IMG/VR virus record: IMGVR_UViG_3300038424_000251
Location: 248,001-312,000 of that record
Strand: one strand, 5' to 3'
Length of the DNA stretch: 64,000 bases
Shown here in pieces: positions 7,967 through 46,150 of the stretch (position 1 is the first letter of the stretch; the number at the start of each line of letters is the position of its first letter). The notes beneath the pieces were generated by a model, which saw only the letters and a program-made list of their open reading frames with translations, did no database searches and was not told the origin of the DNA. A program made the translations under genes and the position numbers.

Positions 7967-8704
7967 ATGAAAGTATCACCATCCGCAAAATTTTACAAAT
8001 ATTATCAGGTTATGTCACTAAAAAATGATGCAGATAAAGCTTTTTTTGATGATTTTGATGATGATTATAAAGATTTGTCCGTATCTCGTCCTTCAAGTTG
8101 GCCTTACCGTAGTTTGATTTCACAGTCAGTAGCAAAAGCAGCAAAGGATGAAGCAGCAGTTGTCGGGGCAACTCAACCACAACCAAAGGTTCAAAAACCG
8201 AATGTAATTCCTATAATGTTTGATGTAATCATTGGAAGTCCCAAACAAAACAATAACAACAATAAAAATTTTGTTGTCAATTCTTCTGATAAACTCCTTT
8301 ATTTGTCATTTAACCGTTATGTGATTCAAACAGCAATTAAGACATTTAATGATAATATTAAAAAGTATTATAACCAAACACTTCCCCGATTCATTATTAA
8401 GAGTGGTTGTGTTTCTTTGAATACCGGAAAAGATATTGAATTGTTATTTTATGGTTTAATATTTGATGATATTAAAATAACCGCTTCATTTATCTATTAC
8501 GATGATGCCTATGATGAATTTAATACTATAGAAAGTCTTAACATTTTGAATGAAATCAACCGAACTTGTGAATTTTTCATCTTGGGTGAATATGAATTGG
8601 ATGAAACAGAAGAGCACATAACCGACATGAAAATCGAATCTTTTGGTTATGTCAACCGAATTAGGAATATAAGGGAACAATTATATAAACAAAATGAATG
8701 GTAA
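7967..8704 (+). CDS. hypothetical protein (paralog 2)
   Basis: FFILGEYELDE..HITDMKIESFGYVN. Confidence 0.8.
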   Translation: MKVSPSAKFYKYYQVMSLKNDADKAFFDDFDDDYKDLSVSRPSSWPYRSLISQSVAKAAKDEAAVVGATQPQPKVQKPNVIPIMFDVIIGSPKQNNNNNKNFVVNSSDKLLYLSFNRYVIQTAIKTFNDNIKKYYNQTLPRFIIKSGCVSLNTGKDIELLFYGLIFDDIKITASFIYYDDAYDEFNTIESLNILNEINRTCEFFILGEYELDETEEHITDMKIESFGYVNRIRNIREQLYKQNEW

Positions 8705-12387: not shown

Positions 12388-12791
12388 GGGCGTGTAATGG
12401 TATCGATTTATCATAACAGTCATACAGAGCATGTAGAGGATTGGTCATCTGTGGCCTCTTAAAAAACGAAGACTAAACTAAATGCTAATCTAAATCGATT
12501 GGTAAATGCTGACTTTGCTTTTGAGGTTAATACCTTTGAGGAAGTCGCTGTAGCGGCCTAGTTTCCGCTCCGTCATGTTGAGTGATTCTCACTAATTCAA
12601 TAATGGCGTAAAACCGTGAGAAAACTGCTTGTGGTTAAAATTACAGGACTGGTTAGATTGGGCAGTTCTCAATCTAGGTTTGATAATTTTCTCAAATTTT
12701 GATATTAAACCGAAGTTTAAAGTTGATAAACATGTAGTGCTGGATGGGTGTAATGGTAAAAACACGGGTTCAATTCCCGTCACGTCCACCA
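12388..12791 (+). ncRNA. ssrA: tmRNA
   Basis: GGGCGTG/CACGTCC-A-CCA acceptor with G3:U70, T-arm acggg-ttcaatt-cccgt, tag ORF 12484-12561 ANLNRLVNADFAFEVNTFEEVAVAA; promoter TTGACA ~12344. Confidence 0.93.
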
Positions 12792-18813: not shown

Positions 18814-18888
18814 GCTTCATTAGTTCAATGGCAAGAACAGGCGCCCCTAAACCGCCTTATAAGGGTTCAAGTCCCTTATGAAGCGCCA
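18814..18888 (+). tRNA. tRNA-like with CUA anticodon (amber suppressor-like)
   Basis: GCTTCAT/ATGAAGC-G-CCA; loop ccCTAaa; C31:C39 mismatch. Confidence 0.65.
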
Positions 18889-19156: not shown

Positions 19157-19160
19157 ATTT

Positions 19161-19243
19161 AAGATACACACAGCAATAAAAAATTGTCTAGTTGTAGGAA
19201 ACAACATAAAAAGGTCCCTCAGAAAAGAGTAAATCGGTATCTT
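19161..19243 (+). ncRNA. CAGCAA-stem RNA copy 1
   Basis: aagatac..acagcaa...gtatctt. Confidence 0.7.
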
Positions 19244-19248
19244 GAAAT

Positions 19249-19406: not shown

Positions 19407-20502
19407 TCACGATTGAATTCGGAACGCTTTCGAATGAAATCATAATGGTTTGTGTTCATACGGTACGAAACGCCGAAAGGTAGTAGTTGTTCAGTCAACC
19501 GTATCATGTGTGCCGATGTAATGACGGCGTAAGTAAACAACACTATAGTTGTTCACACTATGAATATTTGTTCTTTGTCAGTAGATTTAACGGGGAGTAT
19601 CGTCTCCGTTGGAGTTGCCGCAAGGTGACTTCATAAAGATAAACCGTAGCAATACGGCCAAAGGGATGGCCCCTAACGGCCACTCACCAATCGCAAGGTT
19701 GGACACCGATACAACGAGCGAAATCTGTAAATATCATCCAAAAGATGGTGTTACACTTAAAGCTGGGATGGAAAATGGTATCTGAGGGTAACACTGTAAG
19801 ATATCTACTAACGATGCCGTCGAGCACTACCATCTGCCAAGCGCAACAGTGAGAGTTAAGATTTAAGCAAAGTAGTGAGGTTTGAGGCCAGCAACCAAAA
19901 GCTTCACTACAATCTGATAGAAACCGGCCAAGGCTCATACTGAGGACGGAATCTTGAAAGATGAATGAGTATCCGCAAGAGAAAGTTAGGACTTGTGTGG
20001 CATTTTGTATCTCCAAAAGGTATGAATCCACAGGCACCGCACAAGTTTGTTAGGTTGATATAGCTCAAAGTAGAGCAACTGTATTCAGCACAGTAGGCTG
20101 CCGGAGTCAAATCTGGCTATCTATTAAAAAACGCAAAGCCGGTGCCCGCGATGACTGAAAAAGTCTTAATTCTGGAGCCGCAAGGTAATTCAGACAACCG
20201 TAGCTCGCAAGGTGAAAGTTGTTCGTGTTGAAGGTAACGGAGAGGTTAGCCCCTCTTACTGCCCGCAAGGCAGACGTTAAATGAGACGCGGAATAGGTTG
20301 TCGTCAGGTTGGAAATGCCACCAACTAAATCAGGCAGACTTACCGGATAAACCATACGTTGTCCCGCAACGGTGGATTTGGATGAAGAGGAAGACTATCC
20401 GCAAGGTAGTGATAATCTTAGAAGGCCGGTACACAATGAGGTATTCTCACTCAAAGTAAATCACAAAATTGTCGAGATAGACCTTCGGGGAACGTTTCGT
20501 GA
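19407..20502 (+). ncRNA. giant structured ncRNA, GOLLD-like
   Basis: ~1.1 kb, GC-richer, no + strand ORF, many GCAA/GAAA tetraloop hairpins, promoter 19375, end pairing tcacga/tcgtga, terminator after it, located among tRNAs; family name is from recall. Confidence 0.7.
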
Positions 20503-26532: not shown

Positions 26533-26597
26533 AGATTCAGTAGTTTAGTGGTAGAACAGTCAAATGACAAACGCTGGCTCTAATCCAGTCTGAATCT
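26533..26597 (+). ncRNA. degenerate tRNA-like RNA
   Basis: agattca/tgaatct, D arm, stub gtca-aa-tgac, last arm gctgg-ctctaat-ccagt; no CCA. Confidence 0.5.
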
Positions 26598-31212: not shown

Positions 31213-31290
31213 GCTTCGGAAGCTTAAGTCTGGATAAGCATCAGACTTTTAATCTGATGACAGTGGGTTCGAATCCCACCCGGAGCACCA
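31213..31290 (+). tRNA. tRNA-Lys(TTT)
   Basis: tcaga-ctTTTaa-tctga. Confidence 0.9.
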
Positions 31291-31471: not shown

Positions 31472-31546
31472 GGGTTCGAAACTTTGATGGTGAAGCTCAC
31501 TCTCTTAAAGTGCTGGAACTGAGTTCAAGTCTCAGCGAACCCACCA
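31472..31546 (+). tRNA. tRNA-Lys(CTT)
   Basis: cact-ctCTTaa-agtg. Confidence 0.85.
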
Positions 31547-31862: not shown

Positions 31863-32600
31863 ATGAAAAGAAAAATTAAAAATACAACGATGATATCAGG
31901 TATAGTTTTACTATTCTTGATAGGAATTTCTACATCATTTATTATTGGTAGTAGTAGAAGCCATAAAGTAATAATAAATCCATCATCAAATTCAACATAT
32001 ATTGTGGTTTCAAACAATGTAGTAATACCCTCAAATGTAGTACCTTCAACTAATGTAGTGATATGTTATTCAAATAATATTTTGAGTGATAGTGATATGA
32101 TTGAGATTATGGATACTGGAGCAATACCCAATTTTGACAGAGTGACCAATAATATTTACCGAGGAAGTCAACCAACCGAAGTAGGATGGCGATATTTACA
32201 TAATGTTCTTGGTGTGACTAACGTTGTAAAACTTAATACCGAAAAAGAAGGTTCTGATGAATATGCTATATCATTGGGAATGAAGGTTAATTATTTTCCA
32301 ATTTCATTTGAGGAACAAATGATGGGTCCATCAAGTCAAAAAATAAATTCTATTTTAGCATCAATTACGGATAAAACATTTATTCATTGTGGTAGTGATT
32401 TAAGAACAAAATCAGGAATAGATAAAACATTAGACCGTCAAGGGGGACAAGATAGGACTGGTTTGGTTGTTGCTGAATATCGTTATCTTGTGGATGGTTG
32501 GTCAAAGCAAGATGCAAGACAAGAAATGTTACAGCATGGATTTCACACAAGTCTTGTTGGACTTGATTGGTATTGGAGAGAAAAAACAATAAGACAATAA
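31863..32600 (+). CDS. exported Cys-based (PTP/DSP-like) phosphatase
   Basis: N-terminal TM; NF.RV..IYRGSQP; HC...GQDRTG. Confidence 0.85.
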   Translation: MKRKIKNTTMISGIVLLFLIGISTSFIIGSSRSHKVIINPSSNSTYIVVSNNVVIPSNVVPSTNVVICYSNNILSDSDMIEIMDTGAIPNFDRVTNNIYRGSQPTEVGWRYLHNVLGVTNVVKLNTEKEGSDEYAISLGMKVNYFPISFEEQMMGPSSQKINSILASITDKTFIHCGSDLRTKSGIDKTLDRQGGQDRTGLVVAEYRYLVDGWSKQDARQEMLQHGFHTSLVGLDWYWREKTIRQ

Positions 32601-32608
32601 AATAATTT

Positions 32609-32663
32609 GAGATACGAACAGCAACTAAAAAAATTCATATGCTAAATGAAAAATAAGTATCTC
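32609..32663 (+). ncRNA. CAGCAA-stem RNA copy 2 (minimal)
   Basis: gagatac-ga-acagcaa...gtatctc. Confidence 0.7.
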
Positions 32664-32774
32664 GTAATTTAAGCGCTAGTAGGAAAGTAAATACCTCTAT
32701 TGTAGGTATGTCTAGGAGATAACCTCTGCTCAGACCATCAGTAAAATGAATGGGCGGCTTTCTACAGTATTCGT

Positions 32775-32857: not shown

Positions 32858-32932
32858 GGGGAGTTAGCCAAGAGGAAAGGCAGGAATCTGCAAAATTCTT
32901 ATTCGTTGGTTCGAGTCCAACACTTCCCTCCA
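32858..32932 (+). tRNA. tRNA-Cys(GCA)
   Basis: ggaat-ctGCAaa-attct; U73. Confidence 0.9.
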
Positions 32933-32940
32933 ATTTTTGT

Positions 32941-33030
32941 CAGAGTGTAGGAAGGTAACTTGGAAGCCACCCTCGCTTGGAACGAGGCGTCTTTATGACC
33001 CTGTGAGTTCGAATCTCACCACTCTGACCA
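32941..33030 (+). tRNA. tRNA-Pro(TGG) with long variable arm
   Basis: cctcg-ctTGGaa-cgagg; extra gtc-tttat-gac arm. Confidence 0.75.
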
Positions 33031-33036
33031 ATTTAT

Positions 33037-33119
33037 GCCAGAGTAATATATCTAGTTTCTTTCAGATATTTACAGCAAACCATTAGGAAATATTGGTTCA
33101 AATCCGATCTCTGGCGCCA
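33037..33119 (+). ncRNA. tRNA-fused, permuted CAGCAA-stem RNA (copy 3)
   Basis: GCCAGAG/CTCTGGC-G-CCA, T arm attgg-ttcaaat-ccgat, internal atatct..agatat-tt-acagcaa. Confidence 0.7.
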
Positions 33120-33121
33120 AT

Positions 33122-33418
33122 TTCTAGTTCCTTCTGTGGCGGAATGTATCGTAGATGTTACAACGCACGCTATCAGACGCCTTGGGCGGTCTTGTGACAC
33201 AGGAAGGGTAAAGCAAAGTCAGCGAGCCCCGGTTTCGGAAAGGTGGCGCACCGAGACAGACTCGTTTGAGGGCTGGCTACCAATCTATCCCTCATTATAG
33301 GTAAAATCCTATTGCGGTGTTGAGAGTAAGTAGCTCTTACTTGAGCCGTATGGCTGAAATAACCACAACACTTGTGAAGCAACTATACACTTGGTATGTG
33401 TATCAGTTGGGACTAGAA
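33122..33418 (+). ncRNA. orphan ~300-nt structured RNA
   Basis: 10-bp closing stem ttctagttcc/gggactagaa, GC-rich multi-hairpin interior. Confidence 0.65.
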
Positions 33419-33424
33419 AATTTT

Positions 33425-33525
33425 TAGATGCCCACAGCAACACCCAAAAGGTAAAATCAATGCACTATAAAGCAATGACAAGATGGTTCAAACCCATCAA
33501 AACGCCGAAAGGCGTCTGGCATCTA
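33425..33525 (+). ncRNA. CAGCAA-stem RNA copy 4 with T arm
   Basis: tagatgcc-c-acagcaa...gatgg-ttcaaac-ccatc...ggcatcta. Confidence 0.75.
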
Positions 33526-33530
33526 GCTTT

Positions 33531-33606
33531 CCCCGTTTAGCAAATCTGGTGATTGCCTTCGGCTGAAGACCGAATGAGCTCGGTTCGAATCCGGGTACGG
33601 GGACCA
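33531..33606 (+). tRNA. tRNA-Phe(GAA)
   Basis: ttcgg-ctGAAga-ccgaa. Confidence 0.85.
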
Positions 33607-33669
33607 TTTTAATAGTAGAGCGCTAAAATAAAATTAAGCGCTTTACTAATTTCATCATATTTATTTAAT

Positions 33670-34137
33670 ATGAGAGAAATTACTACAAACGAAGAATTGT
33701 CAGAAATAGTTAAAAATTCTATTTCTTGGAGTGACGTAATTAGAGCATGTGGTGCTCCTATAGGTGGGGCAGCATATCAACATTACCAATCAAGAGTAAA
33801 AAAGTTAAATTTTAATACAAGTCATTTTCTAGGAAAAGCAGCGCATGCAGGTCCAAGAGGAACTGGTAAGGCCAAAAGAAAACACTGGTCTGAAATTCTA
33901 ATTTTTAGAAAAACTAACGATAGAGAAAGGTCAAATAAATTCAGAAGAGCATATAAAGAATATTGTGAAGAAAAAAATATTCCTATACAATGTGTTGACT
34001 GTAAAAATGGTGGTGAATGGTATGGAAAGAAACTTAAACTTGAAATCAATCATAAAGATGATTGTAGATGGAATAATATTCCAGAAAATTTGGAATGGCT
34101 GTGCCCAAACTGTCATTCAATTAAAACAATTTATTAA
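33670..34137 (+). CDS. HNH endonuclease
   Basis: CVDC..W.GKKL.LEINHKD..NN..ENLEWLCPNCHS. Confidence 0.9.
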   Translation: MREITTNEELSEIVKNSISWSDVIRACGAPIGGAAYQHYQSRVKKLNFNTSHFLGKAAHAGPRGTGKAKRKHWSEILIFRKTNDRERSNKFRRAYKEYCEEKNIPIQCVDCKNGGEWYGKKLKLEINHKDDCRWNNIPENLEWLCPNCHSIKTIY

Positions 34138-39074: not shown

Positions 39075-39078
39075 ATTT

Positions 39079-39140
39079 AAGATACCAACAGCAATTCTAA
39101 TACAATCCGCTAATCAAGCAGACTAAAAAGATGGTATCTT
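39079..39140 (+). ncRNA. CAGCAA-stem RNA copy 5
   Basis: aagatacca-acagcaa...tggtatctt. Confidence 0.75.
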
Positions 39141-39144
39141 GTTT

Positions 39145-44218: not shown

Positions 44219-44227
44219 TAATGATTT

Positions 44228-44326
44228 GAGATACACGCAGCAATAAAACTTTGTCGGGCAACCGACTCCACGTTGTAGAGAACAACATTAAAAGGTTCCT
44301 CAGAAAAGAGTGTAAATCGGTATCTC
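44228..44326 (+). ncRNA. CAGCAA-stem RNA copy 6 (paralog of copy 1)
   Basis: gagatac-ac-gcagcaa...gttgtag..aacaac..ctcagaaaagag..aaatcggtatctc. Confidence 0.75.
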
Positions 44327-44337
44327 GTTAATTTAAT

Positions 44338-45937: not shown

Positions 45938-46092
45938 TAGATGTGGTAACAGCAATTAAATATTGTTAAAACAAAAAACCCCAAAAGGGAATAAATCCTG
46001 CGAAACAGGTCGTAGCGGTGGCTACGCTAAAAACGCTCAACAGGGGTAAGTTGTAAAAAGAGCTTCGGAGATAACCGTAAATTCCGCATCTA
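45938..46092 (+). ncRNA. CAGCAA-stem RNA copy 7 (largest)
   Basis: tagatgtgg-ta-acagcaa...ccgcatcta; several internal hairpins. Confidence 0.75.
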
Positions 46093-46150
46093 GTATATTC
46101 TTTCTCTTCGTGAGAAAGATGAAGTTTTCCTCTCGGAAGGGAAACTTTAT

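What the first reader, a model, noticed from the sequence alone, without database searches (positions are those of the whole stretch)
33037..33119. Circularly permuted CAGCAA element fused into a CCA-ending tRNA scaffold
Seen: a perfect 7-bp acceptor, discriminator G, CCA and T arm. The D and anticodon arms are replaced by atatct-loop-agatat-tt-acagcaa, the same stem plus motif with the strand order reversed. Inference: the motif is a structural module that survives permutation, which ties the family to tRNA mimicry and to RNase P/CCA processing.
Basis: partly seen in the sequence, partly recalled or inferred. Interest (0 to 1): 0.72.

Follow-up and report, generated by a model that had tools for sequence, protein, structure and literature searches.

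The report
Phage Y-RNA-like tRNA mimic
This 83-base stretch of a giant peat-bog phage is a cut-down tRNA look-alike carrying a conserved hairpin-plus-ACAGCAA tag that, across hundreds of phages, sits next to a gene for a Ro60-like RNA-binding protein, so it is most likely a new kind of "Y RNA" partner of that protein rather than a working tRNA.

Summary
Window 33037-33119 has a perfect 7-bp acceptor stem, discriminator G, encoded CCA and a T arm. There is no D arm or anticodon arm. In their place are a 6-bp hairpin (33048-53/33064-69), TT and ACAGCAA. No tRNA finder calls it.

The same helix-plus-ACAGCAR module occurs in the window five to six more times with the helix opened. There the helix closes the whole element. 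In other phages the module interrupts real tRNAs or flanks circularly permuted tRNAs.

The module tracks one protein family, DUF2828+vWA. Its predicted fold matches Ro60 over its full length. In 79 phage loci chosen by that protein alone, 140 module hits all lie on the gene's strand, mostly just upstream of the gene. This phage has one such gene, with two tandem modules in its leader.

The closest known system is bacterial Ro60 with YrlA, a tRNA-mimicking Y RNA. M. smegmatis YrlA is cut by RNase P and receives CCA. The motif, the protein subfamily and the topology differ here, so I rate it a new variant of a known kind.

Binding, expression and processing of this particular copy are inferred, not shown.

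The parts
33037..33043 (+). acceptor stem, 5' strand (GCCAGAG)
   Evidence: Pairs perfectly with 33109-33115. The pairing is kept in homologs, with one A-U to U-G change.
33044..33047 (+). 4-nt linker TAAT in place of positions 8-9 and the D arm
   Evidence: Sequence. It varies in homologs: AAAT, or TAAAAC in L124.
33048..33069 (+). closed P1 hairpin: ATATCT (33048-53), 10-nt loop, AGATAT (33064-69)
   Evidence: Six pairs kept in all three variants, with one U-A to U-G change and a freely changing loop. Both strands match the family consensus..RYCTWG / TWAGRY... The closed-form model R2 scores 33044-33082 at 18.4 bits, E 0.036, which is marginal.
33070..33078 (+). spacer TT + invariant single-stranded motif ACAGCAA (33072-78)
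   Evidence: Invariant in all homologs and in the family alignment. ACAGCAA is enriched in the window: 21 copies against 8.4 expected, 17 of them on the + strand.
33079..33091 (+). rudimentary hairpin (CC 33080-81 / GG 33086-87) + AAAT linker, at the place of the anticodon arm
   Evidence: RNAalifold pairs it. It is 4 bp (UCCA/UGGA) in the L062-type homologs.
33092..33108 (+). T arm ATTGG-TTCAAAT-CCGAT
   Evidence: Sequence. Kept in homologs, with U.G to U-A.
33109..33119 (+). acceptor 3' strand CTCTGGC, discriminator G33116, encoded CCA 33117-19
   Evidence: Sequence. All tRNAs of this array also encode CCA and use ATTT-type spacers.
19157..19247 (+). family copy, opened-helix form, between tRNA-Val and tRNA-Pro
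   Evidence: Model R1: 33 bits, E 3e-5, not in the training set. P1 TTTAAGATAC/GTATCTTGAA.
32605..32667 (+). family copy, opened-helix form, whose cargo is an anticodon-arm-like hairpin (TTCAT-ATGCTAA-ATGAA)
   Evidence: R1: 43.6 bits. Anticodon-stem-loop scan (as the identical copy in L075).
33421..33529 (+). family copy, opened-helix form: P1 33424-32/33510-18, ACAGCAA 33434-40, a T arm (GATGG-TTCAAAC-CCATC) and a closed 4-bp 'acceptor' (CGCC-GAAA-GGCG). It is the permuted counterpart of the finding.
   Evidence: R1: 25.9 bits, E 0.0015, not in the training set. Fold.
39075..39144 (+). family copy, opened-helix form, directly 5' of tRNA-Lys
   Evidence: R1: 50.9 bits.
44224..44330 (+). probable family copy with variant motif ACGCAGCAA; its cargo is homologous to that of 19157-19247
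   Evidence: R1: 18.4 bits, E 0.087. Sequence and fold.
45939..46106 (+). probable family copy: 10-bp P1 (TTAGATGTGG/CCGCATCTAG) + ACAGCAA (45949) around a 157-nt structured cargo
   Evidence: Helix search. R1 matches only the 5' part, 14 bits.

Best explanation
The element is a small non-coding RNA of the Y-RNA type, built on a cut-down tRNA.

Its acceptor/T-arm 'minihelix' with encoded GCCA should let the host tRNA machinery excise it from the long tRNA-array transcript. RNase P would cut at G33037, and 3' trimming would stop at CCA. This step is inferred.

Its hairpin plus single-stranded ACAGCAA is the recognition module for the phage's Ro60-like protein. That protein is a DUF2828 + vWA ORF of 519 aa at about G000:136404-137963, outside the window. 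This step is inferred from genomic linkage and from analogy with Ro60 and Y RNA.

In most family members the module's helix is formed by the RNA's two ends and the cargo sits inside, as in YrlA. The cargo can be nothing much, an anticodon-arm-like hairpin, a tRNA-like domain or a full permuted tRNA. In this copy the connectivity is reversed: the helix is closed by a loop and the acceptor stem is open. [quoted passage not shown]

The likely role, by analogy only, is to tether or gate the Ro60-like ring with respect to tRNA-binding factors, or to serve as a tRNA decoy. The phage also carries 54 tRNA genes and a tmRNA gene, three Rnl2-family RNA ligases and a CCA-adding-type enzyme, which fits such an RNA-handling toolkit.
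For: Shown:
1. The structure is real, non-random and conserved with pair-preserving changes.
2. The hairpin strands and motif match the family consensus.
3. The family helix P1 covaries strongly: 108 double-change cells, score 0.745 against 0.255 in shuffles, 0 of 500 shuffles as high. The set was selected for having a helix.
4. ORF clustering of about 120 module-bearing loci gives one dominant neighbour in 33 loci, DUF2828+DUF7788.
5. Reverse, unbiased test: in 79 loci fetched by that protein alone, model R1 gives 140 hits at E<=0.01, all on the gene's strand, in 63 of 79 loci. An independent script finds 143 modules on the gene strand against 7 on the other. They occur in 62 of 78 loci, and 46 of 78 loci have one ending within 200 nt upstream of the ATG.
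6. In the phage's own genome, R1 hits occur only in the tRNA array and immediately upstream of the single DUF2828 ORF. There two tandem modules with ACAGCAG lie between a TTGACA-17-TATAGAAT promoter-like site and the start codon.
7. The AlphaFold model of that ORF (pLDDT 86, pTM 0.84) hits Ro60 structures as its top 13 PDB matches over 520-570 alignment columns. They include Xenopus Ro60 (also in complex with RNAs), human Ro60, D. radiodurans Rsr and Thermus phage phiLo Ro60. A vWA MIDAS-like D-x-S-G-S-M motif is invariant or nearly so.

Established knowledge: YrlA genes lie within 4 kb of Ro60 genes on the same strand. They have a short 5'-strand motif contacted by Ro60 and a tRNA-like domain. 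M. smegmatis YrlA is cleaved by RNase P and gets CCA (PMC4201824).

Context: the RNA next door (33121-33420) has ends that fit tRNA-like processing plus CC addition. The phage encodes three PF09414 ligases and a PF01743 nucleotidyltransferase.
Against: There is no binding data. The complex prediction was not run by the tool.

No RNA read covers 33037-33119, so expression and ends are not shown.

This copy lies about 145 kb from the Ro60-like gene.

The closed-hairpin model scores it only marginally (E 0.036), and a likely chance hit inside an ORF scores slightly higher.

Only three sequence variants of this particular element were found, so its own covariation support is thin: one compensatory pair.

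The modules upstream of the protein gene could be cis-regulatory leader elements rather than free RNAs.

The motif (ACAGCAR) and the Pfam family (DUF2828, no TROVE hit) differ from canonical Ro60/YrlA, and Rfam finds no Y RNA here.
Confidence: 0.55

Rival explanations
1. Splicing or permutation cassette. The module is a mini-intron, or in opened form a permuted intron, that is cut out and the flanks are sealed by the phage's nick-sealing RNA ligases. On this reading the finding is a decayed intron-containing tRNA. Splicing would leave a ~45-nt minihelix and free the hairpin-ACAGCAA RNA. The Ro60-like protein could be part of this machinery, so this rival is not exclusive of the best explanation.
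For: In other phages the module interrupts otherwise canonical tRNAs, in or next to the 5' strand of the anticodon stem. Rfam tRNA hits of 113-120 nt show this, as do hand-checked cases in L034, L048 and L091 and about 26 sites found by deletion plus ARAGORN.

The module also flanks permuted tRNAs. All 18 that were parsed structurally become full-length canonical tRNAs once un-permuted, often with CCA plus a normal spacer between the acceptor strands.

A break inside a stem is an ideal nick for Rnl2/Rnl5-type ligases, and the phage has three of them.

A head-to-tail joined RNA exists next door.
Against: No spliced read was seen.

The splice-site distances from the motif vary: 2-12 nt on one side and 1-13 nt on the other, with no conserved junction bases.

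There is no bulge-helix-bulge motif.

The phage has no RtcB and no splicing endonuclease.

Most copies next to the protein gene carry only 20-49 nt of cargo, where splicing makes little sense.

In this phage no functional tRNA carries the module.
Confidence: 0.15
2. Inert relic. The element is a decaying tRNA pseudogene that happens to retain the acceptor stem, the T arm and an old module insertion, with no function of its own.
For: The D arm is lost and the anticodon arm is reduced to 2-4 bp. One homolog (L124) has two mismatches in the acceptor stem. No close paralogous tRNA exists in the genome. No RNA evidence exists.
Against: Between variants that differ at roughly a third of alignment columns, all stem substitutions preserve pairing. 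The T loop and ACAGCAA are unchanged, while loops and linkers change freely. The element was found in at least three lineages, at different array positions.
Confidence: 0.12
3. Processing punctuation only. The minihelix exists to direct RNase P and 3' processing, so that neighbouring RNAs, such as the 300-nt RNA starting at 33121, get exact ends. On this reading the hairpin-ACAGCAA part is incidental.
For: The 5' end of the neighbouring RNA, as seen in RNA, is 2 nt after the element's CCA. The arrays are densely packed with short AT-rich spacers.
Against: In homologous phages the element is followed by an ORF or a tRNA, not by that RNA. An invariant ACAGCAA and a maintained hairpin would not be needed for punctuation.
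Confidence: 0.1
4. DNA-level element: a promoter, a terminator, a protein operator, or a hairpin-ended mobile element.
For: There is a conserved sequence block upstream of a gene family, and there are inverted repeats.
Against: The helix partners lie 30-160 nt apart, at variable distance, and covary. Hits are strictly strand-specific: 140 to 0, and 143 to 7. Insertions in tRNAs show no target duplication. Both connectivities are maintained.
Confidence: 0.03

Closest known systems
YrlA-type bacterial/phage Y RNAs bound by Ro60 (Rsr), especially M. smegmatis YrlA (Chen et al. 2014, PMC4201824)
   Same: It is a small RNA encoded beside, and on the strand of, a Ro60-fold protein gene. It has a helix plus a short conserved motif on or after the 5' strand. 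It has a tRNA-like domain with a T arm and an acceptor stem. M. smegmatis YrlA is opened by RNase P and receives CCA, giving the same open-acceptor, closed-protein-site layout that this element encodes directly.
   Different: The motif is ACAGCAR, single-stranded and 3' of the helix strand, not GNCGAAN0-1G. The partner is DUF2828+vWA, which gives no Pfam TROVE hit. Rfam models do not match. This copy has no D arm and is not permuted. Relatives carry complete tRNAs with anticodon arms, or only 20-49 nt of cargo.
Ro60/Y RNA ribonucleoproteins (Xenopus, human, D. radiodurans; phage phiLo Ro60 structure 9L5Y)
   Same: The predicted fold of the phage protein is a helical-repeat ring plus a vWA domain. 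The expected RNA partner has a terminal helix.
   Different: Sequence identity is 11-14%. RNA specificity and effector (PNPase in Deinococcus) are unknown here.
Circularly permuted tRNA genes (Cyanidioschyzon merolae, some green algae, Thermofilum pendens)
   Same: Relatives of this element in other phages have the 3' part of a tRNA upstream of the 5' part, with the ends held by a helix.
   Different: There is no bulge-helix-bulge motif and no splicing endonuclease. The break lies in or near the anticodon stem, next to a conserved ACAGCAR. The finding itself is not permuted.
'Enigmatic' introns in Lak megaphage tRNAs (Devoto et al. 2019, PMC6784885)
   Same: They are unclassified insertions in phage tRNA genes, some with a T-arm-like hairpin and an ACAG-containing stretch.
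   Different: Lak inserts are 79-114 nt, are placed at the anticodon loop, and lack ACAGCAA in the stored supplement. Relatedness was not established.
tRNA minihelices and the tmRNA tRNA-like domain
   Same: It has an acceptor stem stacked on a T arm, with NCCA and without a full cloverleaf.
   Different: It has no G3:U70 (C3-G70 here) and no mRNA-like part. It carries a protein-binding hairpin instead.

Membership tests
tRNA (Rfam RF00005) | Cloverleaf with a D arm and a 5-bp/7-nt anticodon arm | tested here: not met
   No ARAGORN call. No Rfam tRNA hit even at E<=10. Only 48 nt lie between the acceptor and the T arm, folding as hairpin + motif + stub.
tRNA (Rfam RF00005) | 7-bp acceptor stem, discriminator, CCA, T arm with a TTCRANY loop | tested here: met
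   the only non-tRNA hit to the strict signature, with 0 hits in shuffles.
YrlA / bacterial Y RNA | Encoded near a Ro60 gene on the same strand | tested here: inconclusive
   The family meets it strongly, and so do two copies in this genome. This copy is on the same strand but about 145 kb away, in the tRNA array.
YrlA / bacterial Y RNA | Conserved GNCGAAN0-1G motif in the 5' strand of the terminal stem | tested here: not met
   The motif here is RGAYRY-NN-ACAGCAR.
YrlA / bacterial Y RNA | tRNA-like domain in the order V, T arm, closed acceptor stem-loop, D arm, inside a stem formed by the RNA's ends | tested here: not met
   This copy has the reverse connectivity and no D arm. Copy 33421-33529 has the T arm and a closed stem but no D arm. 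Relatives in other phages have the full order.
YrlA / bacterial Y RNA | Match to Rfam Y RNA / YrlA covariance models | tested here: not met
   No such hit at gathering score in the window or in 14 loci, nor at E<=10 over 32900-33650.
YrlA / bacterial Y RNA | Physical binding to the Ro60 protein | not testable with these tools
   Complex prediction returned no fold for a protein-RNA pair.
Ro60/TROVE proteins (the proposed partner) | Ring of helical repeats plus a C-terminal vWA domain | tested here: met
   The top 13 Foldseek PDB hits are all Ro60/TROVE, full length, probability 1.0. A D-x-S-G-S-M motif is invariant or nearly so.
Ro60/TROVE proteins (the proposed partner) | Pfam TROVE (PF05731) sequence match | tested here: not met
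   No hit in the genome at E<=0.1. The ORF matches DUF2828 + DUF7788 instead.
Permuted tRNA genes / BHB introns | Bulge-helix-bulge motif at the junction, and a splicing endonuclease | tested here: not met
   The linkers beside the helix are about 10-20 nt on one side and about 1-13 nt on the other, not 3-nt bulges. PF01974 is absent.
Group I tRNA intron | A catalytic core of about 200 nt or more | tested here: not met
   The inserted modules are about 41-46 nt. There is no Rfam intron hit.

The most novel reading that the evidence does not exclude
The module-bearing tRNAs of these phages, both the interrupted and the circularly permuted ones, are matured into working tRNAs by a previously unknown pathway. 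In it the Ro60-like ring recognises helix+ACAGCAR, the flanking single strands are removed, and phage Rnl2/Rnl5-type ligases seal the nick templated by the anticodon stem. That would give the first permuted tRNA genes and a new protein-dependent intron class in bacterial viruses. The 83-nt element would be a non-decoding offshoot, perhaps a regulator or competitor of that pathway.
Probability: 0.15. Interest if true: 0.95.

Novelty: new variant of a known kind. Interest (0 to 1): 0.75.

Why it matters
Ro60 and Y RNAs are conserved from bacteria to humans, yet their bacterial and phage functions remain poorly understood.

This analysis points to a second, abundant Ro60-like lineage in phages. 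It comes with its own easily recognised RNA partners, often several per genome.

Those partners range from 55-nt hairpins to complete tRNAs presented in two connectivities. That gives a rich natural series for asking what the tRNA-like part of a Y RNA is for. Candidates are tRNA quality control, repair after host anticodon nucleases, and decoys.

It also explains many 'gaps' in phage tRNA arrays, and tRNA genes that tRNA finders miss.

Tried and rejected
- Rfam, both at gathering score and at E<=10, gave only a weak SpF41_sRNA match (20 bits against a cutoff of 52). That match is driven by the acceptor and T arm.
- An alternative hairpin, ATATTT/AAATAT, enclosing ACAGCAA is not conserved in homologs.
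- The GenBank phage collection holds no relative of the region.
- Ancestry: no paralogous tRNA in the genome resembles its acceptor and T arm.
- Splicing enzymes: RtcB, the splicing endonuclease and T4 Rnl1 are absent (the Rnl1 control rang nowhere).
- From memory I compared the motif with the hammerhead, twister, twister-sister, pistol, hatchet, hairpin and HDV ribozymes, with CRISPR repeats, with retron msr, with IS200/605 ends and with phage promoters. None fits, and none was tested formally.
- Pairing of ACAGCAA with GOLLD: GOLLD contains no complementary TTGCTGT.
- RNA-seq: the metatranscriptome contigs do not cover the element.
- Complex prediction for protein plus RNA was not folded.
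- The closed-form covariance model R2 is too short to be decisive.
- Literature searches for ACAGCAA, permuted or split tRNAs in phages, and DUF2828 found nothing relevant.

Full report
**Setting.** The window is bases 248001-312000 of a 365,299-bp IMG/VR virus record that CheckV rates as complete. The record is 33% G+C. Near-identical DNA is held by peat and wetland metagenome runs. The window carries 43 tRNA genes and a tmRNA gene by ARAGORN, plus a GOLLD RNA by Rfam, all on the + strand.

**The observation.**
- GCCAGAG (33037-43) pairs perfectly with CTCTGGC (33109-15).
- G33116 is the discriminator, and CCA is encoded at 33117-19.
- ATTGG-TTCAAAT-CCGAT (33092-108) is a T arm.
- Between the acceptor and the T arm lie TAAT, a 6-bp hairpin ATATCT/AGATAT (33048-53/33064-69, 10-nt loop), TT, ACAGCAA (33072-78), and a stub hairpin CC-ATTA-GG.
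- A strict scan for the acceptor/NCCA/T-arm signature finds nine tRNAs and this element on the + strand. It finds nothing on the - strand and nothing in 200 shuffles.
- ARAGORN and Rfam's tRNA model do not call it. The only Rfam echo is a sub-threshold SpF41_sRNA match.

**Homologs of the element.** Pattern scans of IMG/VR found identical copies (L075, L127) and two diverged variants: the L062/L121/L123/L126 type and L124. Loops and linkers differ heavily between variants. ACAGCAA and the T loop are unchanged. Every stem substitution between this copy and the L062 type keeps pairing; L124 alone has two acceptor mismatches. RNAalifold returns the acceptor stem, the hairpin, the stub hairpin and the T arm, with ACAGCAA unpaired. 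With three variants, this support is real but thin.

**The family in the window.** ACAGCAA is enriched in the window, with 21 copies against 8.4 expected. The context RGAYRY-N1-3-ACAGCAA occurs five times in the whole genome. All five are in the tRNA array on the + strand. In the other copies, the strand 5' of the motif pairs with a partner 30-160 nt downstream, so the helix (P1) closes the element. These copies are 19157-19247, 32605-32667, 33421-33529, 39075-39144, and probably 44224-44330 and 45939-46106. Copy 33421-33529 holds a T arm and a closed 4-bp 'acceptor'. It is the permuted counterpart of the finding.

**The family elsewhere.** In about 120 IMG/VR loci the module appears in three settings.
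- Solo elements of 50-76 nt. Sixteen of 56 carry a canonical anticodon-type stem-loop, against 1.8 expected from shuffles.
- Around circularly permuted tRNAs. The order is anticodon arm, T arm, acceptor 3' strand, often CCA plus a spacer, acceptor 5' strand, then D arm. All 18 that I parsed structurally become full-length canonical tRNAs once un-permuted.
- As a 41-46-nt insert with the helix closed by a short loop, in or beside the 5' strand of the anticodon stem of otherwise normal tRNAs.

P1 covaries strongly in a 40-sequence alignment. The caveat is that the set was chosen for having a helix. A covariance model (R1) finds 58 hits at E<=0.001 in 880 kb of those loci, many of them outside the training set.

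**The protein partner.** I clustered all ORFs of at least 100 aa from those loci. One dominant family emerged, present in 33 loci with a median length of 483 aa. It often starts 34-114 nt after a module. Pfam calls it DUF2828 + DUF7788, with weak vWA_Ro60 matches.

I then ran the test in reverse, with no RNA information. I fetched 79 loci by the protein alone; at least 524 relatives exist in IMG/VR.
- R1 gives 140 hits at E<=0.01, all on the gene's strand, in 63 of the 79 loci.
- An independent script counts 143 modules on the gene strand against 7 on the other. They occur in 62 of 78 loci, and in 46 of 78 one ends within 200 nt of the ATG.

The phage itself has one such ORF (519 aa). Two tandem modules with the variant motif ACAGCAG sit between a sigma-70-like promoter and its start codon. 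Genome-wide, R1 hits only there and in the tRNA array. The AlphaFold model (pLDDT 86) has Ro60 structures as its top 13 PDB matches over the full length. Pfam TROVE itself does not match.

**Comparison with what is known.** Bacterial and mycobacteriophage Ro60 genes are flanked, on the same strand and within 4 kb, by YrlA RNAs. A YrlA has a terminal stem with a short 5'-strand motif that Ro60 is thought to contact, and a tRNA-like domain. M. smegmatis YrlA has a 7-bp acceptor stem, is cleaved by RNase P and receives CCA (PMC4201824). In Salmonella, rsr and yrlBA share an operon with the RtcB ligase. That operon is induced by damaged tRNAs, and a decoy role for the tRNA-like domain has been proposed (PMC7790460).

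The present family parallels this system in layout and linkage. It differs in motif, in protein subfamily, in carrying full tRNAs or almost nothing as cargo, and in existing in both connectivities. The finding is the open-acceptor, closed-helix form. I therefore file it as working like a Y RNA and tRNA mimic, and as a new variant rather than a member of YrlA. Three defining features of YrlA, namely the motif, the CM match and the domain order, were tested and not met.

**Mechanism, marked by status.**
- Shown: the structure and its conservation, module identity, linkage to a Ro60-fold gene, and the presence in the phage of three Rnl2-family ligases and a CCA-adding-type enzyme.
- Inferred: excision by RNase P and 3' processing, binding by the Ro60-like protein through the hairpin plus ACAGCAA, and a tethering, gating or decoy role.

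**Main rival.** The module could be a splice or permutation cassette. The interrupted and permuted tRNAs keep this reading alive. Against it are the variable junctions, the absence of RtcB and EndA, and the predominance of tiny cargos next to the protein gene. The two ideas are compatible.

**RNA evidence.** One wetland metatranscriptome holds a 227-nt contig joining 33276-33420, then CC, then 33121-33200, without mismatches. The neighbouring 300-nt G+C-rich RNA is therefore present in an RNA library. It begins at the first base of an 11-bp terminal helix, 2 nt after the element's CCA. It ends one base past that helix. It carries two untemplated C and occurs head-to-tail joined. This fits tRNA-like end processing in this array, but it does not cover the finding itself. 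DNA in the library, or a tandem DNA variant, has not been excluded.

**Limits.**
- Nothing here shows binding, expression or ends of the 83-nt RNA.
- Several counts rest on my own heuristics and on ARAGORN's tolerance.
- The literature library is partial, so 'not described' means not found there.

Noticed in passing
window 33121-33420: A G+C-rich (50-57%) ~300-nt non-coding region closed by an 11-bp helix (33121-31/33409-19), with no Rfam hit. A metatranscriptome contig joins 33420 + 'CC' + 33121 with no mismatches. This suggests a circular or tandem RNA whose ends look like tRNA-type processing plus CC addition.
   Followed up: partly
G000:136275-137963 (outside the window; L133:1228-2916): Two tandem modules with the variant motif ACAGCAG lie between a TTGACA-17-TATAGAAT site and the ATG of the phage's only Ro60-like (DUF2828+vWA) gene. 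They could be co-transcribed Y-like RNAs or an autoregulatory leader.
   Followed up: partly
L019, L023, L012, L036, L037, L068, L083, L109 and others (IMG/VR loci): Circularly permuted tRNA genes in phages, bounded by the helix+ACAGCAA module. Some have CCA plus a spacer between the acceptor strands. Several carry suppressor-type anticodons (cta, tta, tca). Some have 6-nt 'anticodon' loops (AUAAAC).
   Followed up: partly
L034 119-237 and 330-449, L048 3002-3114, L111 1418-1534, L107 4840-4957: tRNA genes of 113-120 nt with a 41-46-nt module insert in or near the anticodon stem. Rfam finds them; ARAGORN missed those it was run on (L034, L048).
   Followed up: partly
window 19988-20453 and 12388-12791: A GOLLD RNA (165 bits) and a tmRNA gene (tag ANLNRLVNADFAFEVNTFEEVAVAA) lie in the same array. 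ROOL RNAs and tmRNAs occur in several related loci.
   Followed up: no
window 18814-18888: A tRNA with anticodon CTA (amber suppressor type, labelled Pyl by ARAGORN). It may indicate TAG recoding in this phage.
   Followed up: no
window 31213-31287, 31472-31543, 26534-26597: Rfam tRNA hits (61, 38 and 45 bits) that ARAGORN does not call. tRNA-Pro 32941-33030 has a 13-nt insert in the variable region.
   Followed up: no
window 31863-32600 and 33670-34137: ORFs with tyrosine/dual-specificity phosphatase-family matches and weak HNH endonuclease matches flank this part of the array. The first ends 5 nt before module 32605-32667.
   Followed up: no
G000:126-127 kb, 189 kb, 213 kb and 9 kb (L128-L131): Three Rnl2-family RNA ligase ORFs, one with an N-terminal PHA02142 OB fold. 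A SpoU methylase ORF lies about 700 nt upstream of the 189-kb ligase ORF, and there is a PF01743 CCA-adding/poly(A) polymerase-family ORF.
   Followed up: partly
window 8299-8340: The best hit of the closed-hairpin model R2 (19.2 bits). It lies inside a 245-aa ORF and is probably a chance match.
   Followed up: partly
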